Source of the DNA: Ophelia neglecta
Taxonomy: Eukaryota
Direction: 5' to 3'
Assembly: GCA_965285935.1 (NCBI GenBank)
Contig: OZ260662.1
Span: 87,854,001 to 87,918,000 of the forward strand
Length of the DNA stretch: 64,000 nt
The translations under genes and the position numbers were made by a program. The notes below the pieces were generated by a model. That model ran no database searches and was not told where the DNA came from. It saw only the letters and a list, made by a program, of their open reading frames with translations. Shown one piece after another: positions 1-35,422 of the stretch (positions are counted from its first letter, which is position 1; each line of letters opens with the position of its first letter).

Positions 1-1918
1 TCTTAAGTTGGGTATAGTTTATTGTTCATTGTACCGTCTATTTTTATTTACATGGAGATATTCGTAAGATGTAAGAGGTTATTGAGCTCTATTTCGTAAA
101 AAAATCTTCTAGGTCGGTGGGTCAGATGTTTTTCTGACTAAAATGTGTTAGTAAAGGAACATAAAAGGTTAGTTGTTTAATAAATAGATAAAAGAAAGTT
201 GATACTGGGTGGTAGTGGTGGTCTTCAAGGGGGGGGGGGGGGGGGGAGGGGGAAAGCCAGTTCCCAAAATGTATATATATATATCAATATATATATGCAC
301 TTTTTGAGAAATTATATTACTTCAGCAGGCTACTGGAATTAAATGACTCTCCTAGTCTGAATAAAAATTTACCTTTTGATTGTTACACAAATTGCATTTG
401 GAACACAGCTTTTTTTGTACATGTATATAGTATCTGTCCATTACTCATATCAATTCACTAAGACACATATAATGCCATAGACAAAATGTTATTGCTGTTG
501 TTCCACTTGCTACAATTATAAATGCACATAACAGAAACTGACACAATTTTTTAAAACTACTAGCCCAAAACTTAATATCAGAGCCTTGCTGACCTATTAC
601 ACAATCATGCAATTTAAGCTAATATTACTTGCCCCAAATTTCATTTTTACTTGCCCTGGGCAGTTGGTCAGTCACTTATGTCTGACCCTGCAGATCTATT
701 TTTGAAATTATGACTTGACCACTTAACTTTACATATTATAAAATTTGAACAGCCTAGATTATCCTCCCTGGGCTGCCACTGCCAGAGAAAGGAAATGTTA
801 GATAATTTTCATGACACTTTATTTTATGTGGTCTTTGTGAAACTGGCAACAAATAAATATTTTAACAGAATATATTTTGTGTAGTTGATTCATTATAATG
901 AATGCCAGGTTTTCATGTACCTATTAAGATACATATCATGGCATATAAGTTAATGCCTGAGGAACGCTACATTACCAGAAAAAAATTTTGTCTGAGGTGC
1001 TTTGCCCCAAAGAACATTGTTTTCTTGTAATGTAGCATTCCAAGGGTGAGAACCTATGTAAAATCCGCTCAAAAGGCAACAACGATACATTACCTGAAAG
1101 TAATGTAGCGTTAAGACAACAGAAAATACATACAGTGGATTTTACCAGTGTTTTTACTATTACATGTAAGGTTGTATGCATAGTGCAAAAGTAAACAGCT
1201 AAGATTATATCACTGCCAAGCATGCAACTATCAAATAACTAGTATGGTACAGCTTAATTCATAACTTTGAATTTTGAGGCAGTACACAATGCACCATACA
1301 ATCACAGAGATCTGCTTACTGTACTAATATTACATAAAATTGCATGATTATGGAAATCATACATGGGATCTTTCAGACCTATAAATTGAAGCCTATTAAA
1401 ATTAAATGTAACAGTGATAAGCATGCACATGATTCCTCATGTTGGCCCCTTTTACTGAAAGTGTCATACTTTTTAGTGGGTTTTGGGTGTTTAATTGGGT
1501 GACTCAGTTGTGTTGGGTGTAAGTTTTGTCAGGAATTAAGCAAATTGGATGCTATGTGTCTGAAATAACAATGATAAACATGTTATGGGTCAGAGTAAAA
1601 TGACCTTAAAATGCCTTGTGATGGGAGATAAAGCACCAAAACAAATTGTGACTGTCAATCAATACCTAGCGTGTCCTATTTAATAAATGTGTCCTGTTGA
1701 TGTTATCAGTGAACCAAGCATTCCAATCATAATGCTTTCTAACCTAAGATCAAGTCCCGAGTGTTTATACATGTACTGTAGTTCCTGATTTATTGGCCAC
1801 TTGACAGGTCAAGCCCTTTTGAGGCCCTCAGCTGTTAACATTTCATGTTATGTCTTTAATCTATGTCGGACACATGTGTAACAGTCAACTCTCAGGCTTG
1901 ATTGCCATCATCTTTGTT

Positions 1919-3239
1919 CATGTTATATATAAACCATGACAAGCTTTTCCTAGAAAAACAAAGGTTTTAGAATATGAGGCACAATCCAAGATTTACCAAA
2001 TCCAAGTTTCCAGACTTCATTCATAAGGCCTGTACCATGACATGTTCCTTATTTGGCAACAGCAGCACCCAGCCGGTCAACATTGGGGAGATGTGGGCCC
2101 CACAAATGTGATCTCTAAAGTGTTGAACAGCAAACAGCGACATTGCCCATTAACAGAAATCCAAGGCGCAATACTACAGCAAATAGTATGGAATGGTTTG
2201 AATATAGCCTAGACAAACATTTGATATTCTTTGTTTCTAAAGACTAATAAAGAGTATCTTTTTAGAATATCTATTGGCATATTTCTAGCTAAAAAATCAC
2301 AAAAATAGTAGGACCGACCGCAATGAGCCTGTGTTTCAAGTTAGGGATGAAATAAAGAAAAAAAAATTAAGGGACAATGGGAACTTTAATGCTTTGGGCA
2401 TATGCTCCCACTGCTTTGATAGCAAGGCTGTAGGCCAAGGGATCAAGGCAGTTAGGGAGAGCTTATTACTCTTGCGGTATAGAAAATTCCCCTTAATGGC
2501 AGGTCCTATATTTGTTTAGTCTGTCATGATAGAATAAGCTACAAACTTGCATTGCTAAAGCCTGGCAAATTGGGAAGATTTGCTCAGTAGGAAAATGTAT
2601 TGGAGTATTATGGGTGATCATCCATATTGTACACCCACTGGAGATCCATGTTTGAGCTATAGATGCTAGGATGAGATGGTTTTGCTCCGGTGAGATGAGA
2701 AGAATGACACAGCTCATCGTCTAGTTTATGGATTTAAAGCTCTTTACCATTACAACATAAAAAGCCCATTTTTTGCTTTATGATAATGTTGAAAATAGGT
2801 GGGATTTAAAAGGTATATGCTTGAGGTCAATATTTTTACAAAGTACAGTCAACATGACATGTATTTGACAGATAAAGGCTTGACATGCTGAGTACTGGCA
2901 TAACCTGATAAGAGTATAACTACAATATACTGTATTACTATGGTGTAATTGATGTTTTAAAAAAATAACAATATGTATCACCAATGTCAGAAAAATAGAA
3001 AAAAGGTTGTTTGCTGTCACGGCTTGTCATATACTCTGTGTCAAAAGTCATATCTTTCACATTGTTTTAGAAAATCACAATGAAATATTTTTGTGTGCAA
3101 AAGTGTTATAAACACCTACGGCAAATACCAAACCCTTCAAATGAACCCTTTAACGGAAGATGAATAAAAAGGTTACTAGCGTTAGAAACAGTTAAGTGGG
3201 TGGTAGTGATTGCAGGTGTGACCTGGGCTACCTTATTGT
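1919..3239. repeat. Copy A of 1.32-kb direct duplication of non-coding host DNA (copy B 11628-12948)
   Basis: Constant 9709-bp offset at both ends. Three short ORFs have identical translations in both copies. No mismatch seen in spot comparisons. Confidence 0.95.
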
Positions 3240-4317
3240 TGTAACCTTGGGTAATTTTTCCCTCTACATTTTGTTAAGAGATAGGTAGGAATCAAGGTAA
3301 GTTGTTTTGTTGTTCAGTGATCGTTGTTTATTGTTTCAAGTTACACGCATATGCTTGGGACCCTTATATCTTTTGAACACCTGTGAACCAAACAAAATTA
3401 TATCTTTTACACACTAACACACTATTTATACACAAATATACACATCATTAATATCGTTTAAACATCATTCCATATTCATTCAATCACTTCTATTCACATC
3501 CTTTTAAACATCACTTCATATTCATTTAAACACTATTTCATATCCATTTAAACACTATTTTTCCAGAACACGCATTATCAATGAAACCTCAATTATATCA
3601 TACCCTGAATTGGGGTGTCCGAATGAGAGATGAGAGGCTCTGGGGAGGGCGTCTATTTCAGATCTATAAGTAACACAAACTGACTGGTTTAGATACAGCC
3701 AATATAAAATGCACTACAGTATCGGTCCTTATATAGGCCAACACATACGAAGTCAATGCCTTAAGTCATGTAGTACAGGGTCACATGCCTACACAATATA
3801 CAGTGTGGCAGTTATAGGTTTCTGTCAATACATGTGACAAAGGCCTAGACTAAATGTCAAGAGATATGTGCCAAGTACCAGCAAAATACTCTCTTCTCAA
3901 GAATACAGGTTATTTTATATACCCAACACACTATTAAAGACACAGTACAGTGTTTAAATAGACTTTCAATGTACTAAAAGTATAGATTTGGTATGACAAA
4001 CCTCAATTAGAATTTCCTATTAACAATTTCACATCCTTCCCTGTCAGAATCTTGAGAGCCTCTGATTTAAAACAGTTACACTTCCCACAAGGCAGCACAA
4101 AACCATTTAAGGGATCACATACCATTGGTCAGATCCAATATACAACACAGGTCAAGGTGACACTTTACATAAGGTAATACCACTTGTGCATAACTAATTA
4201 GCTGACACCACAGCTACATAATCATGATAATACTATACATACAGTTCATACACACACACACACTACTAGGTATACGGAAGTAGTAATCCAAATGGCTTAA
4301 GATCCCATCTGGTTACA
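3240..4317 (-). repeat. 3' LTR of the Gypsy element (1078 bp)
   Basis: 7-bp terminal inverted repeats TGTAACC/GGTTACA. Immediately preceded on the minus strand by a purine tract. Homologous (inverted) to 10152-11203. Confidence 0.92.
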
Positions 4318-4354
4318 TCCTCCTCCACCACGTGAAATGACGTCTCGGCATTTC
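4318..4354 (-). promoter_or_regulatory. Polypurine tract plus upstream hairpin of the Gypsy element
   Basis: Minus strand TGGTGGAGGAGGA directly abuts TGTAACC. Stem gaaatg/catttc at 4334-4354. Confidence 0.8.
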
Positions 4355-4785
4355 TGATTATATAGCTTCAAATTTATCCTTCTACATATAAGATTCATTT
4401 TACGCTACTATAATAACCACTATTAATATGTTCACAACTATGGGACATCTGAAACAAATTTCAATGCTCAAAAGAAAATTCACGTAAAATTTCACACATG
4501 ATCCGGCCAAAACATATATCAAACCCTATGCACCAACCTCTCCCCCCTCCATATGAAATGGCGTCTCGACATTTTAATCCAACAACTGTAAATAAAGAAC
4601 GTTGCCAATTTACCATGAAATTCAAATCACAAATGTCATACAGCCCTTTAACCAAAGCTCAGGAAAAATAACGGAACAAGAACCTTAAAAGTAGACTTGC
4701 GAACAATCAGAACCAATGTCACAACCAATGCTGGTCCAAATATTTCCACGAAACTCAAAAACCTACAATCCAAGTGACAGAATGA

Positions 4786-7700
4786 CTAGACCCACTCAAT
4801 CAGAACTCGAGCCTTCTTTGGATTCTCAGGAAATATCATATCTTTGATGAAATTTCTCATGCCTGTAATATATGTTCCATCACGGAGTTTCAAAGGTGGT
4901 TGTCTATTGCGGGTAGGGCGAGACCTTCCATCGCCATCCCGGGCCTTGACTACGGATGGTATACTGGCTTCATTCACTGGTTGATCTCCTTTCTCATCTG
5001 GGTCTGCTGTACCATTGTGTACTGCAGCTATTACCAATTTTTCTTTTGGTGTGCCCTGGTCTTCATCTGTACTTCTTTCAACAGTATCGTCTTCTTCCTG
5101 TTCGCCCTGTTTAGTTCTCATAACTGGGATATTTTCGACAACTGCCTTTCTGATAATGCTGGAACCTTCATTGGATGTGTCTTCTGCATTTTCTTGTATG
5201 ACCTGACTATCTATTCTGACTGGCTCTTGAGTATTCTGTACGTCCTCAGACCTTTCTATGGTAAAAAACTGAAAGTCTTCTTCAGAATCGTCATCTGTGA
5301 TTTCCTCTTGGTCTTCCCTATGAACATTAATTTCAACCAATGGCTCTGGTTCTGCAGGTTCTGTAGTCCGCTCCGAGACTTCGTCCACATTTTTGATTCC
5401 AACGGGCAATGGTTCTATTGGTAGCAAGTGATTCCTGTGTAGAGTTCTGACTGGCTCTTCCTCATCTGTTTCTTTCCTGACCTTGAATACTGGGATATCT
5501 GTGTTGGGCTGGTCCACTACCACATAAACATCCTCTTCCCATCTGTCATCCAGCTTGTGTTTTCCCGAAAATGCTAATTTCTTAACCAGTACTCGGTCAT
5601 CTTTTTCCAAGACAGCTCCTCGTATTCGCAGGTCGTATGCACTCTTTTGTTTTTCTCTTGATTTCTCTGCTGCTGCACTGGCGGCCTGATATGACTTCCT
5701 TAAATGGTGTTTCAGGGTCTCAACGTATTCACAGTATGAAGGGGTTTTTGGCTCATCTATACCAATGAGAAGGTCTATGGGCAACTTTGGGTTTCGACCA
5801 AACATCAAGAAGTGAGGTGAGTATCCAGTACTTTCATGTCTGGTACAGTTGTAAGCATGAGCCATCAGGTCGATGTAGGTCTTCCAATCAGCTTTCTCGT
5901 CTGCTTCTAGAGTGCCCAGCATGTTCAGCAAAGTCCTGTTCATACGTTCCGTCATACCATTGCCGCTTGGGTGATAGATGGAAGTCCTGGATTTGGCTAT
6001 ATTTGTGAGTTTGCACAACTCTGCAATCAATGCGCTCTCAAAATTAGTACCCTGGTCACTGTGTATCCTTTGGGGTAGGCCAAAGTATACAATAAACTTG
6101 TGAAGAAGTGCTTCAGCTGTTGTTTTTGCAGTCTGGTTTTTCGTTGGCACCGCTACGGCATATCTCGTAAAGTGGTCTGTTATCACCAATATACTATTGT
6201 GCCCTCCCTTTGAAGTTTCAAGTGATAGGAAATCCATTGACACGAGCTCCAATGGTTGAGAGGTCTTGATACTCACTAGTGGAGCACGTTGAGTAGTTGG
6301 CGACTTTCTTCTTAGGCATCGATCACACTTTGTAACCCAATCAGTCACATTCTTTGATAGATATGTCCAATAGTATCTCTCTTGGACAAGCTGTAGTGTG
6401 CGTTCAGATCCTGGGTGTCCAATATCATTGTGTAGTGCCTGCAAAATTGTGTTCTTAAGTGATTCTGGTATCACTATCTGAAATCGTTCTTCATCTTGTA
6501 TCTTTGTTCTTCTACACAACACTCCTCTTTTCATCACCAGTCTTCCACGTTGTCGCCATAAGGGACGCATGGCTTCATTACAAGGTAATCTCTTGTTGCT
6601 ACTCTGTGACATGTATTTGATCATGTCATTCAAGATAGGGTCAGCACGTTGCTTTAGTCGAATATTACGGGTAGAGGTGGCATCATCGATTGTTGGGTTT
6701 TCCGCCTCGAACAGTTGTTCGCAAACATTTGCAGACATGCATAAGCTGTTTATGAAAGATGGGGATATCTGACTTCTGTAGCAAACTGATTTGACAGATT
6801 CACCGTCAATCTGTTTTACTTCTGTCGTCTCTTGGTTGTCTGTGTTGTGAGGTAGCCTTGACAGTACATCAGCATCAATATTTTTCTTCCCTGGTCTGTA
6901 TCTAATGCTGAAGCTGTAGGTGGCAAGGGCTGCGGACCATCTGTGACCAGTCGCATCTAATTTGGCAGATGTTAGAATGTACGTCAATGGATTGTTGTCA
7001 GTCACTACAACAAATTCTGGTGCTCCATAAAGGTAGTCATGAAATTTTTCTGTCACTGCCCATTTCAGAGCAAGAAATTCCAATTTGTGGGCGGGGTAAT
7101 TCTTTTCAGACTTCGTCAACCCACGGCTGGCATACGCTATAACACGTTCTTTTCCATCATGGTTTTGGTACAAGATAGCTCCGAGGCCACTGACGCTCGC
7201 ATCTGTATGTAGGATGAATTGTTTGTCGAAGTCGGCATATGCCAGGATAGGTGGGGATGTCAGTTCATTCTTCAGTTTATCAAAAGCTGTTTGCTCTGTT
7301 TGACCCCAACGCCATGGCTTCGGTTCTGACTTCGACATTTCTCCCTTCTTCTTCTTCTTCTTCTTCTTCTGCTTAGCTCCTATCAGGTCATGCAGTGGTT
7401 TGGCGATCTGAGCAAATCTTGGGCAGAAACGACGATAGTAGCTAGCGAATCCAATGAATTGCATCAGCTCAAGCTGGTTTACAGGCGTTTTCCAACTGGT
7501 TATCCGCTCAATTTTGTCAGGGTCGGTCTCTACTCCTTCAGATGACACAATGTGGCCAAGGAACCTGGTTTTCTTTTTAAGGAAATGACACTTGGATGGT
7601 GCTAACTTCAGGTTGCTCTTCTCTATTCTTTCAAAAACTTCTCCAAGGTTGGCCAGGTGTTCCTCAAATGTCTTTGAGAAAACAATGATGTCGTCAAGGT

Positions 7701-9210
7701 AAATGACGCAGATGCGATGGTTAAGATCACCGAGCATATTTTCCATCATGCGTTGGTATGTGGCTGGTGCATTTGACAATCCAAAGGGTAATCGATTCCA
7801 TTCGTAGAAACCAAGTGGTCCGGCAGTAAATGCGGTGTATTGCTTGTGTTCCTCTTTCACCTCTATTTGGTGGTATCCACTTTTCATGTCTAAAACAGAG
7901 AAAAACTGTGCACCGTTTAAACAATCAAGTATGTCTTCTAACCTGGGCATTGCGTAGGCGTCTGGTACTGTCTGGAGGTTGAGCTTCCGGTAGTCAATAC
8001 ATAAACGAAGGGTTCCATTTTTGCGGCGAGCTATTACAATATTGGAAGACCATGGGCTCTTTGAGTGGCGAATCAGTCCGGCTCCCAACAGATCAGTCAG
8101 ATGTTCCTTCAGTTCTGTGTAGAGGTTAGGTGGTATCCTACCATAATGACTCTTGATGGGTTGGCTATTTATTAAATTTATCTCGTGTTCAACAGTCGGG
8201 TGTTGTCCAACATCTTTCGGATCTTTTGAAAAGATATGTGACCAAATCTTCAGAAATTCCCTCAACTCTTGAAATTGGTTCTCGGTTCCTGCAGAATCTT
8301 CATCACCATGGTCCAGATTTAAGTCTTCGGGTAAGTCGGTAGGTCGATCAATCTTTTCCTCCTGTGGTAATTCAACTGGTGACTCTATGGATACTGGCTG
8401 GAGTTCTCCTATGACAGCCCGGGGTGGGATGACTAAGGTTCTACTTGCGTGATTAGCAATAGTGACAGAAAACTGGCCACGCATATCACTCTGATAGTCA
8501 ATCACTATAGGCATGATTTCTGAAGTGTCTGGTAATGTAGATTTCTTCGTAGGCAACAGTAAAGCGGCACAATTCGGGTGTGGCAAAGCATGGGATAAAA
8601 ATCCTTTCAGGGTAATGGTCCGATTGGGTTGGATAGTCACATTGCCATGTTCTGCGCTCTTAATTATACCCAAACTATCAACATGCTGGAGGCTTCTCTT
8701 TTGGACTGACATGCAACGCATCGCCAAATACCAAGGGGTGGATAACGGGGCTGTTTGTAGGTATCTGGTGCCATACTGTTGTTCGGTTTGTTCCTTAACG
8801 TTTTTCAAGATGTTGGTTCCTAAGTTGATTGGCACACTTTTGCTAAAAGGGGTGTCTCGAGTGACCAAGAAAAGTGCTGGCATTCCCTCTGGTAGCGTAA
8901 GTTTGGGTACCTGTAGATACGCCTCAACAAACCCAAGGTACTCCAAAAGCTGTCCACTTGCGGTCTCGATTTCCAAAAGTTTATCCAATGGCTGGCAAGT
9001 TAGTCCACGAGGTTCGAAATGTTTCCGATAAAATGCTTCATTGACTGTTGAGATTCCAGATCCGGTATCTAGAAGTGTCTGGCTATCTACTGTGGTGTCG
9101 TCAAAAACAAATGTTATGGGTGTCACATTTGTTTCACCGACTAGCTGAGGAGCTGATTGTACTGGGCCTACTGGTGCGCTCCGGTATAAGTAGGTCCTTT
9201 CCGGTTTAAA
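4786..9210 (-). CDS. pol: Gypsy Pol polyprotein (aspartic protease, RT, RNase H, DDE integrase), probably expressed by -1 frameshift from gag
   Basis: 1446-aa ORF, open upstream to the slippery site. LLDTGS protease; LRLCIDYRKLN, LDMKSGYHQI, LPFGL and YLDD in RT; TDAS/ELLA-like/TDNNPL RNase H; HHCC zinc finger, SMDF, HSDQG and ERMNRTL in integrase. Confidence 0.97.
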   Translation of the reverse strand, partial: FKPERTYLYRSAPVGPVQSAPQLVGETNVTPITFVFDDTTVDSQTLLDTGSGISTVNEAFYRKHFEPRGLTCQPLDKLLEIETASGQLLEYLGFVEAYLQVPKLTLPEGMPALFLVTRDTPFSKSVPINLGTNILKNVKEQTEQQYGTRYLQTAPLSTPWYLAMRCMSVQKRSLQHVDSLGIIKSAEHGNVTIQPNRTITLKGFLSHALPHPNCAALLLPTKKSTLPDTSEIMPIVIDYQSDMRGQFSVTIANHASRTLVIPPRAVIGELQPVSIESPVELPQEEKIDRPTDLPEDLNLDHGDEDSAGTENQFQELREFLKIWSHIFSKDPKDVGQHPTVEHEINLINSQPIKSHYGRIPPNLYTELKEHLTDLLGAGLIRHSKSPWSSNIVIARRKNGTLRLCIDYRKLNLQTVPDAYAMPRLEDILDCLNGAQFFSVLDMKSGYHQIEVKEEHKQYTAFTAGPLGFYEWNRLPFGLSNAPATYQRMMENMLGDLNHRICVIYLDDIIVFSKTFEEHLANLGEVFERIEKSNLKLAPSKCHFLKKKTRFLGHIVSSEGVETDPDKIERITSWKTPVNQLELMQFIGFASYYRRFCPRFAQIAKPLHDLIGAKQKKKKKKKKGEMSKSEPKPWRWGQTEQTAFDKLKNELTSPPILAYADFDKQFILHTDASVSGLGAILYQNHDGKERVIAYASRGLTKSEKNYPAHKLEFLALKWAVTEKFHDYLYGAPEFVVVTDNNPLTYILTSAKLDATGHRWSAALATYSFSIRYRPGKKNIDADVLSRLPHNTDNQETTEVKQIDGESVKSVCYRSQISPSFINSLCMSANVCEQLFEAENPTIDDATSTRNIRLKQRADPILNDMIKYMSQSSNKRLPCNEAMRPLWRQRGRLVMKRGVLCRRTKIQDEERFQIVIPESLKNTILQALHNDIGHPGSERTLQLVQERYYWTYLSKNVTDWVTKCDRCLRRKSPTTQRAPLVSIKTSQPLELVSMDFLSLETSKGGHNSILVITDHFTRYAVAVPTKNQTAKTTAEALLHKFIVYFGLPQRIHSDQGTNFESALIAELCKLTNIAKSRTSIYHPSGNGMTERMNRTLLNMLGTLEADEKADWKTYIDLMAHAYNCTRHESTGYSPHFLMFGRNPKLPIDLLIGIDEPKTPSYCEYVETLKHHLRKSYQAASAAAEKSREKQKSAYDLRIRGAVLEKDDRVLVKKLAFSGKHKLDDRWEEDVYVVVDQPNTDIPVFKVRKETDEEEPVRTLHRNHLLPIEPLPVGIKNVDEVSERTTEPAEPEPLVEINVHREDQEEITDDDSEEDFQFFTIERSEDVQNTQEPVRIDSQVIQENAEDTSNEGSSIIRKAVVENIPVMRTKQGEQEEDDTVERSTDEDQGTPKEKLVIAAVHNGTADPDEKGDQPVNEASIPSVVKARDGDGRSRPTRNRQPPLKLRDGTYITGMRNFIKDMIFPENPKKARVLIEWV
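9149..9210 (-). promoter_or_regulatory. -1 programmed ribosomal frameshift signal (U UUA AAC plus putative pseudoknot)
   Basis: Heptamer at 9210-9204 is in phase with gag (CAT TTA AAC). pol lies in the -1 frame and is closed by TGA two codons upstream. Stems CCUACU/AGUAGG and GGAGC/GCUCC follow. Confidence 0.85.
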
Positions 9211-10148
9211 TGATCAACTATTACTCGGCAGCCTCGTTGTATGTGTCCATACTGACCGCATCGCCAACATCGGAGTGGTTCCCGGTCTGTCATCACTGGT
9301 CTCTGGCCTCTGCCTGCGCTCTGATTTGTCATTTGTGCAGTAGCATTCGAGTTTATACCAACTCTTGGCTGGCCCCTGCGACTCTGATCATTATCTGTTA
9401 CTGGCGTGTATGGATATGCTTCTGGATTCAATGGGATGTGGGCCTGCTCTGCCTGTCCGGACTTCTTCAGTTGAGTCACCTGCTGTTGTAGGTTTGCCAC
9501 CTGGTGCTTAAGTGCATCTATTTCTGAGCTTGATTGTGGTGTGGGATCCGCTATTATCTGTACCCTATTCGTAGTTTTCACCGTCTGCAATTCAGCTTCA
9601 ATTTGACGTAAGTGAATTCTTAAATGGTCGAAATCCTTTATGGTGTCAAATTTGTGGCGAGACCTCTCCTTGAGATTGTTTCTCAATCCGTACCAAAACT
9701 TGGTCCTCAGCATTTCACTAGTGGCTGTAGCATCTACGTGTCCTATCTTTTGGGCTTGTACCAAAATATCTTCCAATCGACAACCCCATCTAACTACCGT
9801 CTCTCCGTCCAGTTGCTTGGCATTATAGAAGTCTGCCAGTATCTCCTCTGTTGGCTGTACACTGCCGTAAAGTTGTTCTAGCTTTATCAGAAGGTCATCT
9901 AAACTAGCTGTCTCTCCAAGTCGCATAGCTACTCTACTTGCTCCTCCTCTAAGTGACTTGCGAACATGTTGTAGTAAAACTCTAGGGTCCATGGTGTGGC
10001 TATCTACCAGACAATTAACCTCGTAACGCCAAAGGTCATAGTCGGTATCCTTGTTCGGGTCTCCTGAAAATGGTGCTATTTTTGGTGGCAACGGTCTCAT
10101 TACATCACTGTTTTGGAATGATCTACCAGGGCCGGTCAAGGGTGTCGA
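9168..10148 (-). CDS. gag: Gypsy Gag (PNMA-like capsid plus zinc knuckle), N-terminally truncated
   Basis: FSGD..YDLWRYEV..SLRG.A capsid motifs and CWRCGQYGHIQRGC knuckle. The frame runs into a TAG at the junction with the inverted LTR (10149-10151). Confidence 0.9.
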   Translation of the reverse strand, partial: STPLTGPGRSFQNSDVMRPLPPKIAPFSGDPNKDTDYDLWRYEVNCLVDSHTMDPRVLLQHVRKSLRGGASRVAMRLGETASLDDLLIKLEQLYGSVQPTEEILADFYNAKQLDGETVVRWGCRLEDILVQAQKIGHVDATATSEMLRTKFWYGLRNNLKERSRHKFDTIKDFDHLRIHLRQIEAELQTVKTTNRVQIIADPTPQSSSEIDALKHQVANLQQQVTQLKKSGQAEQAHIPLNPEAYPYTPVTDNDQSRRGQPRVGINSNATAQMTNQSAGRGQRPVMTDREPLRCWRCGQYGHIQRGCRVIVDHLNRKGPTYTGAHQ

Positions 10149-10151
10149 CTA

Positions 10152-11203
10152 GTATGTATAGTATTATCATGATTATGTAGCTGTGGTGTCAGCTAATTAG
10201 TTATGCACAAGTGGTATTACCTTATGTAAAGTGTCACCTTGACCTGTGTTGTATATTGGATCTGACCAATGGTATGTGATCCCTTAAATGGTTTTTGTGC
10301 TGCCTTGTGGGAAGTTTAACTGTTTTAAATCAGAGGCTCTCAAGATTCTGACAGGGAAGGATGTGAAATTGTTAATAGGAAATTCTAATTGGGGTTTGTC
10401 ATACCAAATCTATACTTTTAGTACATTGAAAGTCTATTTAAACACTGTACTGTGTCTTTAATAGTGTGTTGGGTATATAAAATAACCTGTATTCTTGAGA
10501 AGAGAGTATTTTGCTGGTACTTGGCACATATCTCTTGACATTTAGTCTAGGCCTTTGTCACATGTATTGACAGAAACCTATAACTGCCACACTGTATATT
10601 GTGTAGGCATGTGACCCTGTACTACATGACTTAAGGCATTGACTTCGTATGTGTTGGCCTATATAAGGACCGATACTGTAGTGCATTTTATATTGGCTGT
10701 ATCTAAACCAGTCAGTTTGTGTTACTTATAGATCTGAAATAGACGCCCTCCCCAGAGCCTCTCATCTCTCATTCGGACACCCCAATTCAGGGTATGATAT
10801 AATTGAGGTTTCATTGATAATGCGTGTTCTGGAAAAATAGTGTTTAAATGGATATGAAATAGTGTTCAAATGAATATGAATAGTAGTGTTTAAATGAATG
10901 TTAATAGTAGTGTTTAAATGAATATGAAGTGATGTTTAAAAGGATGTGAATAGAAGTGATTGAATGAATATGGAATGATGTTTAAACGATATTAATGATG
11001 TGTATATTTGTGTATAAATAGTGTGTTAGTGTGTAAAAGATATAATTTTGTTTGGTTCACAGGTGTTCAAAAGATATAAGGGTCCCAAACATATGTGTGT
11101 AGCTTGAAACAATAAACAACGATCACTGAACAACAAAACAACTTACCTTGATTCCTACCTACCAATTAACAAAATGTAGAGGGAAAAATTACCCAAGGTT
11201 ACA
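10152..11203 (+). repeat. Inverted, 5'-truncated copy of the Gypsy LTR
   Basis: Reverse complement of 3240-4242. Lacks the first 75 bp of the LTR, carries ~49 extra bp in an internal repeat and several substitutions, ends GGTTACA. Confidence 0.93.
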
Positions 11204-11205
11204 AT

Positions 11206-11629
11206 TGTAACAACCGGTGGTCTCAGCGGGGTTTGAACTCACTACCCTTGGGTTTCCAGCCAACCACTCTACCAAGTTTGCCAAAGGAGTAACCCCTCTA
11301 GCCAAGCTAGTAGGAGTGTTGTGATCATGCACCAGTGGCCATGACCTGCTCATACATCTCTGTTACATTCTCCCCCCTACTGAGAACCACGTCCCCGTGG
11401 TGGTATGGCCACAGGACGGCTGTTGGGTTCGAGACTCTCGGTGAGACAGTCCCCTACTAGGCTCCATTGTAACAACCGGTGGTCTCAGCGGGGTTTGAAC
11501 TCACTACCCTTGGGTTTCCAGCCAACCACTCTACCAAGTTTGCCAAAGGGGTAACCCCTCTAGCCAAGCTAGTAGGAGTGTTGTGATCATGCACCAGTGG
11601 CCATGACCTGCTCATACATCTCTGTTACA
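11206..11629 (-). mobile_element. TRIM (non-autonomous mini LTR retrotransposon) with tRNA-like LTRs, Helenus-like
   Basis: Two 162-bp LTRs (11206-11367, 11468-11629; one mismatch seen) with TGTAAC...GTTACA ends. 100-bp interior with PBS TGGAGCCTAGTAGGGGA and PPT AGTAGGGGGGAGAA. A-box TGGCAAACTTGG and B-box GAGTTCAAACC in each LTR. Confidence 0.9.
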
Positions 11630-12948
11630 TGTTATATATAAACCATGACAAGCTTTTCCTAGAAAAACAAAGGTTTTAGAATATGAGGCACAATCCAAGA
11701 TTTACCAAATCCAAGTTTCCAGACTTCATTCATAAGGCCTGTACCATGACATGTTCCTTATTTGGCAACAGCAGCACCCAGCCGGTCAACATTGGGGAGA
11801 TGTGGGCCCCACAAATGTGATCTCTAAAGTGTTGAACAGCAAACAGCGACATTGCCCATTAACAGAAATCCAAGGCGCAATACTACAGCAAATAGTATGG
11901 AATGGTTTGAATATAGCCTAGACAAACATTTGATATTCTTTGTTTCTAAAGACTAATAAAGAGTATCTTTTTAGAATATCTATTGGCATATTTCTAGCTA
12001 AAAAATCACAAAAATAGTAGGACCGACCGCAATGAGCCTGTGTTTCAAGTTAGGGATGAAATAAAGAAAAAAAAATTAAGGGACAATGGGAACTTTAATG
12101 CTTTGGGCATATGCTCCCACTGCTTTGATAGCAAGGCTGTAGGCCAAGGGATCAAGGCAGTTAGGGAGAGCTTATTACTCTTGCGGTATAGAAAATTCCC
12201 CTTAATGGCAGGTCCTATATTTGTTTAGTCTGTCATGATAGAATAAGCTACAAACTTGCATTGCTAAAGCCTGGCAAATTGGGAAGATTTGCTCAGTAGG
12301 AAAATGTATTGGAGTATTATGGGTGATCATCCATATTGTACACCCACTGGAGATCCATGTTTGAGCTATAGATGCTAGGATGAGATGGTTTTGCTCCGGT
12401 GAGATGAGAAGAATGACACAGCTCATCGTCTAGTTTATGGATTTAAAGCTCTTTACCATTACAACATAAAAAGCCCATTTTTTGCTTTATGATAATGTTG
12501 AAAATAGGTGGGATTTAAAAGGTATATGCTTGAGGTCAATATTTTTACAAAGTACAGTCAACATGACATGTATTTGACAGATAAAGGCTTGACATGCTGA
12601 GTACTGGCATAACCTGATAAGAGTATAACTACAATATACTGTATTACTATGGTGTAATTGATGTTTTAAAAAAATAACAATATGTATCACCAATGTCAGA
12701 AAAATAGAAAAAAGGTTGTTTGCTGTCACGGCTTGTCATATACTCTGTGTCAAAAGTCATATCTTTCACATTGTTTTAGAAAATCACAATGAAATATTTT
12801 TGTGTGCAAAAGTGTTATAAACACCTACGGCAAATACCAAACCCTTCAAATGAACCCTTTAACGGAAGATGAATAAAAAGGTTACTAGCGTTAGAAACAG
12901 TTAAGTGGGTGGTAGTGATTGCAGGTGTGACCTGGGCTACCTTATTGT
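11628..12948. repeat. Copy B of the 1.32-kb duplication; continues into the apparent empty insertion site
   Basis: Matches 1919-3239. After ccttattgt it continues attcaacg rather than into the LTR. Confidence 0.95.
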
Positions 12949-15914
12949 ATTCAACGTGAACAAGAAGACAACATATATATACTCACGTTTTCGTTGTATT
13001 CCATCGATAACAAAGATGCAATTTGACGCAGTGCGTTTACTAGCAATACCAAAGTACAAGAGCCATTATTTGGGGGGAATGGGGGCCAAAATAGGGCAAA
13101 GTTCTTATAATAACAATATTGTTTTGATAAAAACACTGTACACAAATTCCTCAACCAAATAGTCACAGCCAAACCACACCCACAAATGAACTACCAGGCT
13201 AGCTGCGTCTCATAAAATAGATACATTATGGCAACTAATAAAGATTATAACGATAAATACATCACACACTCAAAGGCACGTTTTCATGTTCATACAAGAT
13301 TTATTTTAAGAAAAGATTCAATAGTTTGAACTACCATGTTTTCTATACTGAAATAACATAAACCGGAAATAAGTTGGTAGCAAATCTAAATAAAGTAGTT
13401 CTCGACTAGCGTATGAATACTTTTTACTTAGCCCCCGGCTTCATGTATTCTGCGCTTCTTTTTCGTTCTTATCCTCTTCGTGCTTCGTCCTATATATATA
13501 TGCCTCGTTGCTCGTTGTGAGTTCTGCATTGTGCAGGTGTTAAATTTGGCCAGTAAGCAGAGAAGGACAAACAAAATTTATTAGACTTGGAGGGTGGAGT
13601 CGGCTACATATGTTCCAGCAGTCTGATTTTGATGTGTTGCACAGGCAGCGGACAACATTAGTGCTCGGGCTTAGCACCACAGTAGCCATGTAGCTGTAAA
13701 TTGCATATGTGAAGAAGTAGTATGTGAGGCCCACTTGTAACACTGGGCCGCACTACGTCGTCACACTCGCAACATACTGCTATAGCTAACTTCGTCATCA
13801 CTAATGTTTTCAGCTGCCTGTGATGTGTTGGTAGTTTTCGAAGTACCGGGGTATATCACAACACTGGTATCCCGGACTGGTATACGTACGTGAGACTGGT
13901 CACTGGGAAGAGTTCTACTGAATTATGGGTCTAACACTTCACCCTGCAGAATATTATATCAAAAAAAAATTCCAATTTAGCCCAAAAAATATGTCTGTAA
14001 AATTTAGTCGTAAACTAATTGTGAAAGGTCCTAGAATAATTTGCCCATATATGCTTTTAACTCGGACAATAAAGCCTATTCCAATTTATTCTCATCTAAA
14101 TGAAGGAGTTTCCCACAGGCTTGATAATCCAGATCCTCTAAATGCAGATGCTATAGCCTACATGTATGTATGCAAAATTATTCTTTTGATATTGACTGAT
14201 TGAGGTTAAACTTTTCCATGCTAACAGCGCAAACGGCAATGAAACAGCTCAAAGAGGCTTTTTACATTATACAACATGAAAACATTTCCTAAGACAAAAT
14301 AGAAAAATAAAAAAACAGACATGCCTTTCGTTATTAAATAAACGTGGTCTTAATACTTTTGATTAGTGGACTTTGCACATTCAAATGAGCAAGTTTTTAT
14401 TTTGATTTGAGTGTTTGGCGGTAACATCTAGAGGCAAACCGTTCCACAGTGTTTCGTTTCGTTAGGAATCCGTGGTTTATACCAGGCGCAGCTACTTTTA
14501 CAAGCTTTCCTCCTCGACCACCAGAGTGCGACAAAAATATTACGCAACATACTCACAGTGTCAGCAGCGTGGAAAACCTAGTCTGCACAATTGTAAAATA
14601 AACACTGACAAGGGTTTATTAAAGGTTTAGGAATTAGTCGTCAGCGGTTGTAAGTTATTGTGCGTGTTCACGGTTTATGGTAATAATCTCTGTTTTGAGA
14701 GGACAAACTTAAAATGACTTGGTTATTAACATAAGTAGACACAAAAATGGCTAATTCAGTAAAGACCAGAATTTACCTGTGACCATGTAGTAAAATTGTG
14801 ACAGGAGACGAGGTATATCTAGAAGGCTATATATATAATCTGGTAATAATATATTACTGTTCTAGATATATAAATTTGTTATATATAGATTGTTGTAATT
14901 AAGACTGGATTAAGGGGGAGTATCTTTCATACTTTGGTAGCAAATTGTTTCGCCTCTAATCCGGTATGAGTACTAGTAATTATCGCATCTATTAAATCTC
15001 CTCTGATACAAGTAACGCTACAGGTCTGTAACTGAAAAATTAACCGCAAAGATAGAGAATCACTGCTCTTCAACTAAGTTGACAAAATAAAGTGCAACTA
15101 ACCCTGTCAAAGAATCAGATCACTCTAAAATCAAAATAGCTAGATTCTCATTATTCTTTGCCATCTATGACAGTCTACTATATATATAATGAAATCGGGG
15201 AGGGGGGGGGGGGGGGCTTACTCTGCATAAAGTCAGAAGGGGTTCTTCCCGTGGCACTTCAATCCCATAACCTTTCCCAGATGAAAAATTAGCTGTATTT
15301 TTTGCAATTATCTTTAAAATGAGATAGTTTAATAGAACATACTTCTAACACATGTGATGTAGATACTTTTCTTATTATTTTTGGGGTGGGCGGCTGCTAT
15401 TTGTTAAAAATGCCTGCCCCATAACATTAACAAAATGTGTTTTGACAACCCTTAAGCCATAATGCCAAAAAGGTGCTCCATTCAGCCTGGAGCATCCTAG
15501 CCTTATACAGAGTGAACCCCCAGGTAATAAAATATGCAAGAAATAAAATTAGCACTTTGAGGATTGAATGATTGTTTTATGTTTCAAGTAACAATTATGA
15601 AAGCACACTCAGGCAATTTAATAATACATGTAAGTTGTAGGTACTTGAGAAACAGTCAATTTCAACATAAAATTATTGCAGTTCATAAAATAAGATGAGT
15701 ATAATTAAGATTCCAAGATTAGTGCAGCAATATACATTTACATGTTTTCAGTTAATGCTACTTTTCAGTGTTACTATTTAGTTGCAAATATGTACCAGTG
15801 AGATCATAATTATAGAAGCCTGTTATGAATATACATGCACTAGTCAGTTTTAAAAATATTCACTATTTTATGTCTTATTTCAAATTTAATTTTTTTTTAG
15901 CATAGTCTTGTAAA

Positions 15915-23805: not shown

Positions 23806-26764
23806 AGTTTTTTTTTCATTGCTAATATTGGGATTTTTTTTACTATTAAATAACAGATGCAAAAATAAATGATGTTTGTGATCGGAAGCATTACCTAGTG
23901 CTGATACTAATGGTTATGTGTTATTGTATTTACTTGTAAATGGTATTAAAAGTGGCTCTGTAAGTGTATGTAGTTTGGCATAAGATGGTGTACATAATAA
24001 ATAGTCTGCTGTTTGGCGAAAAAATTAAAGTGACATTGTTGCTGTACTACTTTGAAATAAATGTGTATAGGCCTACATGTATACTTTTCGTTTCTACCCG
24101 TCACTTTTTAGAAGGGTAAATGTGTAATGAACTCTCTCACACATTTCCTGCCACCTGCAAATCCTAGGTCCAATATAGGCAGGGCATATCACATATCTGT
24201 ATGGTCCCAAAGGCGCTGTGTTTAGGGCAGAAGACAGTTGGTCTAGAAGTAAATAGAAAAGATTGGGATCCCTGTAGTAATATATTGTAATTAACCTTTT
24301 ATTCAGCCTTGACCTTTGGTGAACTGTGTGTAGTGATCATGCCAGAAGCTTTTGCTATAAACGGGGGACATGCATTTAAATCTTACACTGACAAAAGTGG
24401 ACATTACTCTTTCACTGCTAGTGTAATCTTTTGCCGACAGTATGTTTCCTTGCCATTTATGACCTCATACTTGTTAGCAAAAACGGACAGTAACTGTTGC
24501 AACTGCCATTATAAATGGAATTTTTGAATTTTAAAAACTATTCACAAAAGTGAATTAATACCATGTTGGCAAAACCTAAAGTTTTATAACTTTAATTCTT
24601 ACGGCCAAAATTAATCCCAGCTGCATACCTATTTGTGGAAATTTATTTCCATTTATATATTTAGAATTTAGGTTAAAAATATGTGAAGATTAAAAAAAAA
24701 TATATTAAAATATCTTAAAATCGAAAGTCTTATGAGCGCAGCTGTTTTTCGTAGGGGTCCAGTTATGTACATATACATGATACTGTTACAAAATACCGCA
24801 AACATAAATTTGAAATTTTGATATACAGTTAGTTAACAGGTTGAAACAGATAGGACATAAAATACTCATCTTTTAAAACATTACTAAAAAATTTCTTTAA
24901 AACTGGTAGAACTTATTACATGTATGCATTATTTGCATTGCACCCTTTTTATCTAAGAGAAATTGTACTAGAACACTTCTATTTAATTTATCACTATGAC
25001 TAATATGATGTCATAAAAAGGTGTGTATTTAAACACATATTTCTCCTTTTTAATTAAAATTGTTTTTTAAATAATTAATTTCTTTATGATTGCATTTATA
25101 TAGCCTACGTTTTAAAAACAAAAAGGGAAAGTAAATAGATGGTGTATGCGGGTAGTCTGTTAGAAGCAGTAAGGTTCATACAGTTTATTTACACACCACG
25201 GCGATATTCCCCTCACCTTTGCTGTCTCATGCTTATAAGTTGTATACCTCGTCGTAAATAATATGCCATTAACGGCATTATCAACCTGCACACCAGCTAA
25301 GCATGCCAATGAGGCCATTTTTGATAAGTTGGTAATTACATAAATACATGTATTGTAACCAATGCATATAAGCACCGTTTTCACCGTTGACCGCACGATT
25401 TGCACAATTAAAACCGATATGCGTTATGAATGTTAGGCAGAACGACCTATACCATAATAGATATTGTTCTTCATTTTGTGGTACGTACAAATCTACAGGG
25501 GGCACGACCAGGGACCATTGTAACAAAAAAACGCAATGTAACTAGTAATCATTTGCGGGTTTTAGTAATTAGTCAAGTTTTTTTTAGAAATACCGTTTAT
25601 TATGTGTTCAAGGTGAATTTTGAGGTAAAATATTTATTTCACTTTGAAATTCATGAGATGGATTTTAAGCAAATAGTGGCTGCCACATGCTATTTTTATG
25701 CCTCCCTCCCACACCACTGCCCCCCGTGGCCTTCCCTCTAGTTAGTGCCGTACTTGACAGTGTACATGAAGGACGTGATTACCGATTGAATCCAATCAGC
25801 GTGTGTAGCTGAACTTTAGAGGTCACCAATTGGGAGATCATATTCCCTATATTCCCGGTGACCGGTAGAGTACATGCTGTTTCCAAATAAGGGACAAGTC
25901 GGGGAACATGGTTAATTAACCGATGTCAGGTGACTAGGAAATGGCAAATTATGGCCCGTGTCTCATATGAGGTATTACAAGATGCTACCCATGCTTCTTG
26001 TACTTTATTTTAAAGAATGGGTTTTAAAGATAAAATTGGATTTCATATAACGTTGTATATAATGCAGACGCCCATATTAGTGATCAGCAGAAATGAGGTA
26101 TAAGCTCACGTACCTATTGTTTAGTTTGTGCGCACAGATATTTGACATTAATAATTGGGTCATCCAGGGCAATTTCGTGACCGTGGAGAGAAAAATGTTC
26201 TTTTTTTTATGGATTCATCTTCTTTGAGGTCTAAATAATAAATTTAGCCCTGGTGCCTTTTGAAAAATCCAAGACTATAATCTATAATAGGCTTTACTCT
26301 ATTCAAAATAATCCTTAAATGATTTGATATTCTCAAATGGCTGAGCTCTTTATTTCACGATGTTGAAACTAAATACCACAAAATACCACGGTGAATCTTA
26401 CTAACTTTCCCACAGTTACCTAAGAAGGTGTAAGCAAGTTCTTTTTTGTATAGTACCTGTATGTTTAATTTTACAGGTAAACTATTAAGCTTCGTTTAAA
26501 TTGAGGTTTTTAATGTTTTTGAAGTAAGCAAGCTTTATTGTTATTATTATTATTATTATTATTTATTTATTTTAAAAATCATTATTAATGCCATATATAT
26601 ACAGGTAATCAAAACTTTACAGAGATATAATCAGTAATATTTTTAAACAGGAAGCCTATAGCTCATAGGTCTATTACAAAAAATGGAGACACAACGATAC
26701 ATATTGCGTGGCGAATATATAACGAAAAAGCAATAAACAAACAGAATATCAAGTTCATGGGCTG

Positions 26765-35245: not shown

Positions 35246-35422
35246 CAGTGAAACCTGTGAATTAAGACCACCCAAGGGACTTGAAAATACTGGTCTGATT
35301 TCAGAGGTCTTCTGTTTAGACGGTTATTCCACATTGAAAGTATATATTATGTTCATCATATTGGTGGTCTGGATTGACAGGTGGTCTGATTATAGAGGAG
35401 GTCCTTAAGGCAGGTTTCACTG
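35246..35422. mobile_element. Tc1/mariner(pogo)-type MITE, copy 1
   Basis: TA-cagtgaaacctg...caggtttcactg-TA. Confidence 0.85.

What the first reader, a model, noticed from the sequence alone, without database searches (positions are those of the whole stretch)
1919..12948. Gypsy+TRIM composite flanked by a 1.32-kb duplication: candidate giant target-site duplication
Seen: the 8.39-kb insert (3240-11629) starts exactly at a Gypsy LTR terminus (TGTAACC) and ends exactly at a TRIM LTR terminus (TGTTACA). Neither element has its own 4-5 bp TSD. Instead, host 1921-3239 is repeated at 11630-12948, and copy B runs on into an empty site (ccttattgt|attcaacg). Known: LTR integrases join CA-3' ends to target strands 4-6 bp apart. 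Inference: both outer CA ends were joined by integrase 1319 bp apart (uncoupled integration), so two different elements were inserted as one molecule and duplicated host DNA.
Basis: partly seen in the sequence, partly recalled or inferred. Interest (0 to 1): 0.9.

Follow-up and report, generated by a model that had tools for sequence, protein, structure and literature searches.

The report
Aberrant retrotransposon insertion with kilobase duplication
A rearranged Gypsy retrotransposon and a miniature LTR element sit end to end between two identical 1.3-kb copies of host DNA. This looks like a natural case of the faulty "one good end, one bad end" insertion already known from retrovirus experiments, not a new integrase mechanism, and it still needs read-level confirmation.

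Summary
The core observation holds. Window 1919-3239 and 11628-12948 are identical (1321 bp, 0 mismatches). The 8.39 kb between them begins and ends exactly at LTR termini.

- The "Gypsy" is not a normal element. Its two ~1-kb LTR copies are inverted. Its coding strand is the minus strand. Its real 3' LTR is cut after 7 nt and followed by 68 nt of unmatched filler. No primer-binding site follows its 5' LTR.
- The Gypsy is flanked by the same 5 bases (ATTGT), although four relatives all make 4-bp duplications.
- The last ~13-21 nt of the TRIM resemble the host DNA just left of copy A (2 of 3000 random sites score as well). That points to homology-primed host repair at that junction rather than integrase.

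Best reading (0.42): a concatenated, damaged cDNA was inserted aberrantly. Integrase joined one end and host repair joined the other, which duplicated 1.32 kb. This outcome is documented for ASLV and HIV (PMC5041404), and HERV-K shows 111-250-bp duplications (PMC5488345).

No other copy of the locus or the species could be found. This is a new member of a known kind, of moderate interest.

The parts
1900..1920 (+). Host DNA (L) immediately left of copy A. Its last ~13-21 nt resemble the terminal nucleotides of the TRIM (11609-11629).
   Evidence: Anchored suffix alignment of CATCATCTTTGTTCA against TACATCTCTGTTACA was matched by only 2 of 3000 random 15-mers. The best local L-versus-TRIM alignment falls exactly at the junction.
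1919..3239 (.). Copy A of the duplicated host segment S (1321 bp; the first 2 bases, CA, are ambiguous with the TRIM terminus).
   Evidence: 0 mismatches to 11628-12948. No internal repeats, TIRs, tandem repeats or Pfam domains.
3235..3239 (.). ATTGT, the left copy of a 5-nt direct repeat flanking the Gypsy unit.
   Evidence: Read directly. The same 5-mer occurs at 11204-11208.
3240..4242 (+). Complete copy of the Gypsy LTR, running from the U3 start (TGTAACC) to the U5 end. It lies in the opposite orientation to the coding strand (inverted LTR).
   Evidence: It is the reverse complement of 10152-11203, with 8 substitutions, a 48-nt minisatellite indel and a 1-nt indel.
4243..4310 (.). 68-nt filler of unknown origin between the inverted LTR and the stump of the true 3' LTR.
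   Evidence: No significant match to the LTR, to the rest of the window or to the sequence after the 5' LTR.
4311..4329 (-). Polypurine tract (minus strand GGTGGAGGAGGA, 4318-4329) followed by only the first 7 nt of the 3' LTR (TGTAACC, 4311-4317).
   Evidence: All four relatives show the same layout of a purine run followed by TGT. Relative L003 shares the upstream GACGTCATTT motif.
4786..9126 (-). Uninterrupted pol ORF (1446 aa) with RT, RNase H, integrase zinc-binding and integrase core domains.
   Evidence: Pfam E-values from 1.7e-35 to 2.9e-16. Best homologues are 45-55% identical; the named ones are from the bivalves Mytilus and Pinctada.
9168..10139 (-). gag ORF (PNMA-like, CCHC knuckle). 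It lacks the ~25-65 N-terminal residues that precede the conserved block in relatives.
10152..11203 (-). Gypsy 5' LTR in the sense orientation (1052 bp). No TGG-type primer-binding site follows it.
   Evidence: All four relatives have TGG(A/C)GCC 1-2 nt after the LTR.
11204..11208 (.). ATTGT, the right copy of the 5-nt repeat. It consists of 2 junction bases (AT, 11204-11205) plus the first 3 bases of the TRIM.
11206..11629 (-). Complete 424-bp TRIM on the minus strand: 3' LTR 11206-11367, PPT about 11368-11378, PBS about 11453-11466 (TGGAGCC...), 5' LTR 11468-11629. Its termini are TGTAAC...GTTACA.
   Evidence: The LTRs differ at 1 of 162 positions. PPT and PBS were read on the minus strand. 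The PBS matches that of relatives L003 and L005.
11628..12948 (.). Copy B of S.
12946..12960 (+). S end and R start (TGTATTCAACG...). It weakly resembles the TRIM start (TGTAACAACCG...).
   Evidence: The anchored prefix score was reached by 12 of 3000 random sites.

Best explanation
The 1.32-kb repeat is a by-product of an aberrant, only partly integrase-driven insertion of retroelement cDNA. It is not a stretched version of the normal integrase stagger.

The inserted molecule was a concatenate of reverse-transcription products with two U3-type ends. On the minus strand it reads:
- a complete TRIM;
- 2 nt (AT);
- a Gypsy cDNA that lacks its PBS region and ends 7 nt into its 3' LTR;
- 68 nt of filler;
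- a second Gypsy LTR copy appended in inverted orientation.

Proposed steps:
1. Integrase joined the CA-3' end at the Gypsy side cleanly at the S/R boundary (3239|3240).
2. The 3' end at the TRIM side annealed through imperfect homology to host DNA 1.32 kb upstream (1900-1920).
3. A host polymerase extended that end across S, and the product was resolved by recombination or ligation, leaving S on both sides.

Shown: the anatomy, the exact termini, the junction homology, and the departure from the clade's canonical structure.

Inferred: the order of steps, which end integrase handled, and that everything arrived in one event.
For: - Exact 1321-bp duplication with 0 mismatches, abutting intact LTR termini.
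- Both outer ends are U3 starts (TGTAAC / GTTACA), and the two elements lie in the same orientation.
- The Gypsy is structurally aberrant in the ways reported for aberrant proviruses: a truncated end, appended element DNA in inverted orientation, and unmatched filler.
- All four relatives have direct LTRs, a PBS, a PPT and 4-bp TSDs.
- TRIM-end / host-L homology is anchored at the junction (2 of 3000). The Gypsy-side junction shows no homology (1841 of 3000).
- The LTR arms differ by 8 substitutions, 6 of them within the first 130 nt (P = 1e-4), while S has none (P = 3e-5 under one clock). The arms were therefore not copied from one template in a normal cycle.
- PMC5041404 describes exactly this outcome: one normal end; an aberrant end joined to viral DNA in either orientation or to host DNA; usually short homology at the join; and host duplications of hundreds to thousands of bp.
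- PMC2857682 states that uncoordinated joining of the two ends causes genomic alterations.
- A second independent Gypsy landing within 3 bp of the TRIM edge would be very improbable, which favours one event (inference).
Against: - There is no read-level or allelic evidence that the structure exists in the organism. The pre-insertion site is inferred only from copy A's left edge and copy B's right edge.
- The ATTGT 5-mer on both sides of the Gypsy (about 1e-3 by chance) and the TGTA..CAAC similarity between the TRIM start and the S/R junction (12 of 3000) are not predicted by a one-step model. Explaining them needs either chance or short templated copying near the integrase site.
- The junction homology is imperfect, and its significance rests on one anchored test among four junction comparisons.
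- The origin of the 68-nt filler is unexplained.
- It is unexplained why both LTR copies end at the same inner nucleotide while neither is followed by a PBS.
Confidence: 0.42

Rival explanations
1. Integrase itself joined both outer CA-3' ends of a Gypsy+TRIM composite to the two target strands 1319 bp apart, as two uncoupled half-reactions. Gap repair then duplicated the interval.
For: - Both outer ends are complete, unprocessed-looking LTR termini ending in CA, with no loss of element bases.
- The strand polarity gives a duplication (inference from the sequence).
- Both ends are the same kind of end (U3), which integrase recognises.
- Uncoordinated joining is a recognised failure mode (PMC2857682).
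Against: - The anchored homology between the TRIM end and host L (2 of 3000) is not expected for integrase strand transfer.
- In the experimental systems, the large duplications are attributed to host-mediated joining of the second end (PMC5041404).
- The ATTGT repeat is left unexplained.
Confidence: 0.15
2. Two successive events. First, a linear TRIM cDNA was inserted with S duplicated. This could be 'ends-in' repair using short homologies of both TRIM ends to the L/S and S/R boundaries, or a one-ended integration. Later, the rearranged Gypsy with two U3 ends integrated at the S/TRIM edge and made the ATTGT duplication.
For: - Removing the Gypsy plus one ATTGT leaves S(...CCTTAT) joined to TGTAAC of the TRIM. 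Both TRIM ends then show homology to the two S boundaries (2 of 3000 and 12 of 3000).
- The identical ATTGT flanks are explained as a real target duplication.
Against: - All four relatives make 4-bp, not 5-bp, duplications, and animal Helenus-type TRIMs also make 4 bp (PMC10886601).
- It requires an independent insertion to land within 3 bp of the TRIM terminus.
- It needs two aberrant events at one site.
Confidence: 0.17
3. Assembly artefact. The second S copy, or the whole arrangement, comes from a mis-join or false duplication in a heterozygous, repeat-rich genome.
For: - Perfect identity of the two S copies over 1321 bp, while neighbouring repeats differ by about 0.8%.
- No independent assembly or reads could be consulted.
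Against: - The junctions fall exactly on LTR termini rather than inside repeats.
- Overlaps at the junctions are only 2-6 nt, too short for an assembler to join on.
- The inverted LTR copies differ by substitutions and a 48-nt indel, so they are not a fold-back read artefact.
- There are no N gaps in the window.
Confidence: 0.13
4. Illegitimate recombination between two haplotypes or chromatids that carried independent ordinary insertions. One would have the TRIM at L/S and the other the Gypsy at S/R, with an unequal exchange at a TGTA microhomology.
For: A 4-nt microhomology (TGTA) exists between the sequence right of the Gypsy and the TRIM start.
Against: - Neither element shows the 4-bp TSD expected of an ordinary insertion at those sites.
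- The breakpoint would have to coincide with the first bases of the TRIM.
- Two haplotype-derived S copies would be expected to differ, yet there are 0 differences in 1321 bp.
- An exchange between chromatids carrying both insertions would also leave a TRIM left of copy A and a Gypsy right of copy B, and neither is present.
Confidence: 0.04
5. S is the long terminal repeat of a giant non-autonomous LTR element, and the Gypsy and TRIM are nested inside it.
For: - Direct 1.3-kb repeats flank an internal region.
- The outer flanks GTTCA and ATTCA match at 4 of 5 positions if S starts at 1921.
Against: - S lacks TG...CA termini on either strand.
- No PBS or PPT abuts S.
- No internal sequence of its own would remain: the Gypsy and TRIM fill the space to the base.
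- There is no other copy of S in the window.
Confidence: 0.01

Closest known systems
Aberrant ASLV/HIV-1 integrations: one end inserted by integrase, the other by host machinery (Hughes laboratory; PMC5041404)
   Same: - A clean element/host junction at one end.
- Additional element DNA in inverted orientation and unmatched filler at the damaged end.
- Short homology at a host-mediated junction.
- A flanking host duplication of hundreds to thousands of bp instead of 4-6 bp.
   Different: - Here it is a germline-fixed (or at least assembled) event of an invertebrate Ty3/Gypsy element, not a cell-culture provirus.
- Two different elements, an autonomous one and a TRIM, are concatenated.
- Both outer ends are intact U3 termini, so which end was 'bad' is not evident.
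- No drug or integrase mutation is implied.
HERV-K (HML-2) insertions with long target-site duplications (PMC5488345)
   Same: A natural, heritable LTR-element insertion flanked by a host duplication far longer than the canonical length.
   Different: - Those are 111 and 250 bp, with sequenced pre-integration alleles and apparently ordinary proviruses.
- Here the duplication is 1321 bp, the pre-integration allele is unavailable, and the insert is rearranged and composite.
2-LTR-circle-type end joining and capture of retroelement cDNA by host double-strand-break repair (own knowledge: NHEJ-dependent 2-LTR circles; Ty1 cDNA capture at breaks in yeast)
   Same: - The TRIM U5 end meets the Gypsy U3 start head to tail with 2 extra bases, like an LTR-LTR circle junction.
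- Complete cDNA ends are joined without integrase-type duplication.
   Different: - The junction is between two different elements.
- The outer junctions still look like strand-transfer products with a duplication of the correct polarity.
TRIM / Helenus-type non-autonomous LTR retrotransposons of pteriomorph bivalves (PMC10886601)
   Same: - 424 bp in length, two 162-bp LTRs, PBS and PPT at the ends of a 100-bp interior, no ORF.
- An A-box-like TGGTAGAGTGG and a B-box-like GAGTTCAAACC in the LTR.
- A PBS shared with Gypsy relatives.
   Different: - ARAGORN and Rfam do not recognise a tRNA in it.
- This copy has no 4-bp TSD.
Dualen and R9 non-LTR elements with very long target-site duplications (PMC9977147)
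   Same: A kb-scale (median 900 bp) duplication flanking a retroelement insertion, determined by the distance between two strand breaks.
   Different: - Those are a regular property of endonuclease-based target-primed reverse transcription.
- Here it is a one-off departure from a 4-bp integrase stagger.

Membership tests
Ty3/Gypsy LTR retrotransposon (the clade with PNMA-like gag found in bivalves) | gag followed by pol with RT, RNase H and integrase in that order | tested here: met
   Pfam RVT_1, RT_RNaseH, Integrase_H2C2 and rve in order on one 1446-aa ORF, with a PNMA-like gag upstream. 45-55% identity to Gypsy pol proteins, including those of Mytilus and Pinctada.
Ty3/Gypsy LTR retrotransposon (the clade with PNMA-like gag found in bivalves) | Two LTRs in direct orientation | tested here: not met
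   The only long repeats are inverted: 3240-4242 versus 10152-11203. All four relatives have direct LTRs. This copy is a rearranged derivative, not a canonical member.
Ty3/Gypsy LTR retrotransposon (the clade with PNMA-like gag found in bivalves) | tRNA primer-binding site (TGG...) 1-2 nt after the 5' LTR | tested here: not met
   No TGG-type PBS within 24 nt of 10151 and none inside the arms. All four relatives have one.
Ty3/Gypsy LTR retrotransposon (the clade with PNMA-like gag found in bivalves) | Polypurine tract immediately before the 3' LTR start | tested here: met
   The minus-strand purine run at 4318-4329 is followed by TGTAACC, the first 7 nt of the LTR, but the LTR stops there.
Ty3/Gypsy LTR retrotransposon (the clade with PNMA-like gag found in bivalves) | 4-bp target-site duplication (the clade value, from 4 of 4 relatives) | tested here: not met
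   The 4-bp flanks are TTGT versus ATTG. An identical 5-mer, ATTGT, is present instead.
TRIM (terminal-repeat retrotransposon in miniature) | Under 1 kb, two LTRs, PBS and PPT at the ends of a short non-coding interior | tested here: met
   424 bp; LTRs 162 bp with 1 mismatch; PPT followed by TGTAACA, and ACA-A-TGGAGCC, both on the minus strand.
TRIM (terminal-repeat retrotransposon in miniature) | Short TSD (4 bp in animal Helenus) | tested here: not met
   The flanks are ..CAAT and TGTT... This copy was not inserted canonically.
[quoted passage not shown] | tRNA-like sequence in the LTR | tested here: inconclusive
   An A-box match (TGGTAGAGTGG) and a B-box-like GAGTTCAAACC were read on the minus strand. 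ARAGORN found no tRNA, and Rfam found nothing at E <= 1.
Aberrant (one-ended, host-completed) retroviral-type integration | Host duplication much longer than the canonical TSD, directly abutting element ends | tested here: met
   1321 bp with 0 mismatches, against the canonical 4 bp.
Aberrant (one-ended, host-completed) retroviral-type integration | Truncated end and/or appended element or foreign DNA in either orientation | tested here: met
   The 3' LTR is cut after 7 nt, followed by 68 nt of filler and an inverted LTR copy. A TRIM is joined through 2 nt.
Aberrant (one-ended, host-completed) retroviral-type integration | Short homology at the host-mediated junction, none at the integrase junction | tested here: met
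   TRIM end versus L: 2 of 3000 random sites score as well. Gypsy start versus R: 1841 of 3000. This rests on a single locus and imperfect homology.
Aberrant (one-ended, host-completed) retroviral-type integration | A sequenced pre-integration site with one copy of the duplicated segment | not testable with these tools
   The species is absent from the searchable collections.

The most novel reading that the evidence does not exclude
A Gypsy element and its TRIM parasite were packaged together. Their cDNAs were fused into a U3/U3-ended concatenate. Integrase then inserted the two identical-type ends in uncoupled half-reactions 1.3 kb apart. On this reading, LTR-retrotransposon integrase can by itself create kb-scale segmental duplications and co-mobilise two elements in a natural germline.
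Probability: 0.12. Interest if true: 0.7.

Novelty: new member of a known kind. Interest (0 to 1): 0.4.

Why it matters
If the structure is real, it is a germline example, in an invertebrate, of a failure mode of integration known mainly from retroviral vectors in culture. It would also be several times longer than the 111-250-bp natural HERV-K cases.

It would show that LTR-retrotransposon insertions can seed small segmental duplications. It would also show that they can lay down composite, inverted-repeat-bearing inserts that later promote rearrangement.

Practically, it is a warning for annotation. TSD-based LTR finders would miss or mis-split this locus. LTR-divergence dating would be meaningless for the inverted LTR pair, whose differences are clustered rather than clock-like.

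Tried and rejected
- **Independent copies of the locus or family.** Exact-product look-ups of pol, gag, an S-internal ORF and the ORF spanning S/R were all blank. A metagenome scan with a TRIM PBS/LTR 20-mer was blank. The closest pol is 55% identical and the closest host VWA exon 71%. The species is therefore not in reach, and no allele comparison was possible.\n- **S as an LTR or a transposon.** It has no TG..CA termini, no TIRs, no internal repeats, no domains and no second copy in the window. Rejected.\n- **An old TRIM remnant left of copy A, which would allow ordinary unequal crossing-over.** Only the terminal ~20 nt align, and the unanchored alignment is not significant (136 of 200 shuffles). 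Rejected as extended homology, kept as junction microhomology.\n- **The 68-nt filler as an inverted copy of the leader that follows the 5' LTR.** No similarity (918 of 1000 shuffles).\n- **The filler or 3' UTR matching anything else in the window.** Only chance 11-14-mers.\n- **The long inverted repeats as TIRs of a DNA transposon carrying a captured Gypsy fragment.** Rejected, because the PPT is followed by the same 7 nt that begin the repeats, which identifies them as this element's LTR.\n- **A simple in-place inversion of the 3' LTR.** Rejected, because the 7 nt TGTAACC are present both at the stump and at the outer end of the inverted copy.\n- **tRNA in the TRIM LTR.** Not detected by ARAGORN or Rfam.\n- **PMC1317513 (Oh et al. 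2006).** The paper could not be opened.

Full report
**1. What is in the sequence**

The duplication is real in the assembly. Window 1919-3239 and 11628-12948 are identical over 1321 bp with no mismatch, and identity stops sharply on both sides. The first two bases (CA) could belong either to the host or to the terminal CA of the TRIM. There are no N runs in the window.

S has no other full copy in the 64 kb. Only 110 nt of it has a 71% match, at 25859-25968. It has no internal repeats, tandem repeats or protein domains.

The 8.39 kb between the copies starts at 3240 with TGTAACC and ends at 11629 with TGTTACA.

**2. The Gypsy is rearranged**

gag (9168-10139) and an uninterrupted 1446-aa pol (4786-9126; RT, RNase H, integrase) lie on the minus strand.

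The two ~1-kb repeats, 3240-4242 and 10152-11203, are inverted relative to each other, not direct. Read on the minus strand:
- The right copy is a sense 5' LTR starting TGTAACC.
- No TGG-type primer-binding site follows it.
- The conserved part of gag begins only 3 residues after the first methionine. Relatives have about 25-65 more N-terminal residues.

At the other end, a polypurine tract (rc of 4318-4329) is followed by TGTAACC (4311-4317). These are the same 7 nt that begin the LTR. The LTR then stops and is replaced by 68 nt that match nothing (4243-4310). After that comes a complete LTR copy in the wrong orientation.

Four relatives were fetched for comparison: Mytilus trossulus (L001), Pinctada (L004) and two contigs of an ENA assembly (L003, L005). 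All four have:
- direct LTRs and TGT..CA termini;
- a purine run followed by TGT;
- a PBS of the form TGG(A/C)GCC 1-2 nt after the LTR;
- 4-bp target duplications (CATG, TACC, ATTC, TTAG).

This copy therefore departs from its clade at three defining points.

The two LTR copies differ by 8 substitutions and two indels. Six of the eight substitutions fall within the first 130 nt (P = 1e-4). At the same rate S should have about 10 differences but has none (P = 3e-5). The LTR pair is therefore not a clock, and the two copies probably came from different templates.

**3. The TRIM**

The TRIM occupies 11206-11629 and is a complete 424-bp element on the minus strand, the same orientation as the Gypsy.
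- It has 162-bp LTRs with 1 mismatch.
- Its PPT is AGGGGGGAGAA followed by TGTAACA.
- Its PBS layout is ACA-A-TGGAGCC, the same PBS as relatives L003 and L005.
- It shares the U3 terminus TGTAAC and an ACGTGGT motif before the PPT with the Gypsy. This is only weak evidence that the two are partners.
- Its LTR carries A-box-like and B-box-like motifs, as in Helenus TRIMs of pteriomorph bivalves (PMC10886601). ARAGORN and Rfam do not call a tRNA, so that assignment is inconclusive.

Because the TRIM is on the minus strand, both outer ends of the whole insert are U3 starts. The TRIM U5 end meets the Gypsy U3 start through 2 bases (AT), like an LTR-LTR circle junction.

**4. The junctions**

- The TRIM has no TSD.
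- The Gypsy has no 4-bp TSD, but the same 5-mer ATTGT lies on both sides (3235-3239 and 11204-11208).
- The last 13 nt of the TRIM match the host DNA just left of copy A at 11 positions with one gap. The match extends to about 17 of 21 positions with gaps. Only 2 of 3000 random 15-mers from the window do as well in the same anchored test, and the best local L-versus-TRIM alignment falls exactly at the junction.
- The TRIM start and the S-end/R junction share TGTA..CAAC (12 of 3000).
- The Gypsy-side junction shows nothing (1841 of 3000).

**5. Mechanism**

The polarity of the two outer joins is the one that yields a duplication. The plus-strand 3' CA is joined at 1920/1921, and the minus-strand 3' CA at 3239/3240. 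This is inference from the sequence.

The literature describes this outcome. When only one end of ASLV or HIV DNA is inserted by integrase, the other 3' end primes host-polymerase synthesis on nearby host or viral templates, usually at a short homology. Several sequences can be appended, in either orientation. Recombination then fixes the end and leaves deletions or duplications that "could be hundreds or thousands of bp long" (PMC5041404). Uncoordinated joining is also named as a source of genomic alterations in PMC2857682.

Natural precedents exist:
- HERV-K insertions with 111-bp and 250-bp duplications (PMC5488345).
- For non-LTR elements, Dualen duplications with a median of about 900 bp (PMC9977147).

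I therefore read the locus as an aberrant insertion of a concatenated, damaged cDNA. There is a clean integrase-type join at the Gypsy side and a homology-primed, host-completed join at the TRIM side. The second join copied S.

One event is favoured over two, because an independent second insertion would have to land within 3 bp of the TRIM edge (inference). However, the ATTGT flanks and the TGTA..CAAC similarity fit a two-step history better: the TRIM first, with S duplicated, then the Gypsy. I cannot exclude that history. Against it, the clade's TSD is 4 bp, not 5.

**6. What remains open**

- There are no reads, no second assembly and no allele. The species is not in the searchable collections. 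Misassembly therefore cannot be excluded. The junctions on exact LTR termini, the 2-6-nt overlaps and the diverged inverted copies all argue against it.
- The origin of the filler is unexplained.
- The loss of the PBS region is unexplained.
- It is unexplained why both LTR copies end at the same inner nucleotide.

**7. Verdict**

The duplication is most likely insertion-linked. Integrase acting at both ends is not shown, and the TRIM-side homology argues against it.

The phenomenon is a new, unusually long and composite natural member of a known class of aberrant integrations. Interest is moderate (0.4), pending read-level confirmation.

Noticed in passing
window 4340-4360 and 4560-4580 (minus strand): The motif GAGACG(C/T)CATTTCA followed by a purine run occurs twice in the Gypsy 3' untranslated region. 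One copy sits just before the PPT and one is 220 nt upstream. Relative L003 has GACGTCATTT before its PPT. This may be a conserved plus-strand priming or packaging signal with an internal second copy.
   Followed up: partly
window 3457-3560 and 10838-10986: A 22-24/46-nt minisatellite lies inside the Gypsy LTR. The two LTR copies differ by a 48-nt copy-number change here.
   Followed up: partly
window 27159-28844 (+): A 561-aa ORF with the C-terminal part of an RT domain and a zf-RVT domain. It is probably a 5'-truncated non-LTR (LINE-type) retrotransposon.
   Followed up: no
window 53512-54198 (-) and 62986-63642 (-): Two ORF-sized exons encoding von Willebrand factor type A domains (E about 1e-38). 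The best database relative is only 71% identical, so the host species is not represented.
   Followed up: partly
window 59515-59976: An array of about 13 copies of a 33-nt tandem repeat, open in both strands (ORFs 59502-60068 minus and 59524-60033 plus). GC skew is high in this 2-kb bin.
   Followed up: no
window 61674-61798 / 62268-62392 and 35322-35424 / 36219-36321: Two pairs of 100-125-nt inverted repeats (93% and 84% complementary), spaced 469 and 794 nt apart. They are possibly MITE-like or foldback elements.
   Followed up: no
window 1972-2079 versus 25859-25968 (opposite strand): A 110-nt stretch of S is 71% identical to a sequence 24 kb away. S therefore contains a fragment of an old dispersed repeat, although S as a whole is single-copy in the window apart from the duplication.
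   Followed up: no
window 1916-1920 versus 12949-12953: If S is taken to start at 1921, the outer flanks of the whole S-insert-S unit are GTTCA and ATTCA (4 of 5 identical). I judged this to be chance, since S has no LTR-type termini.
   Followed up: yes
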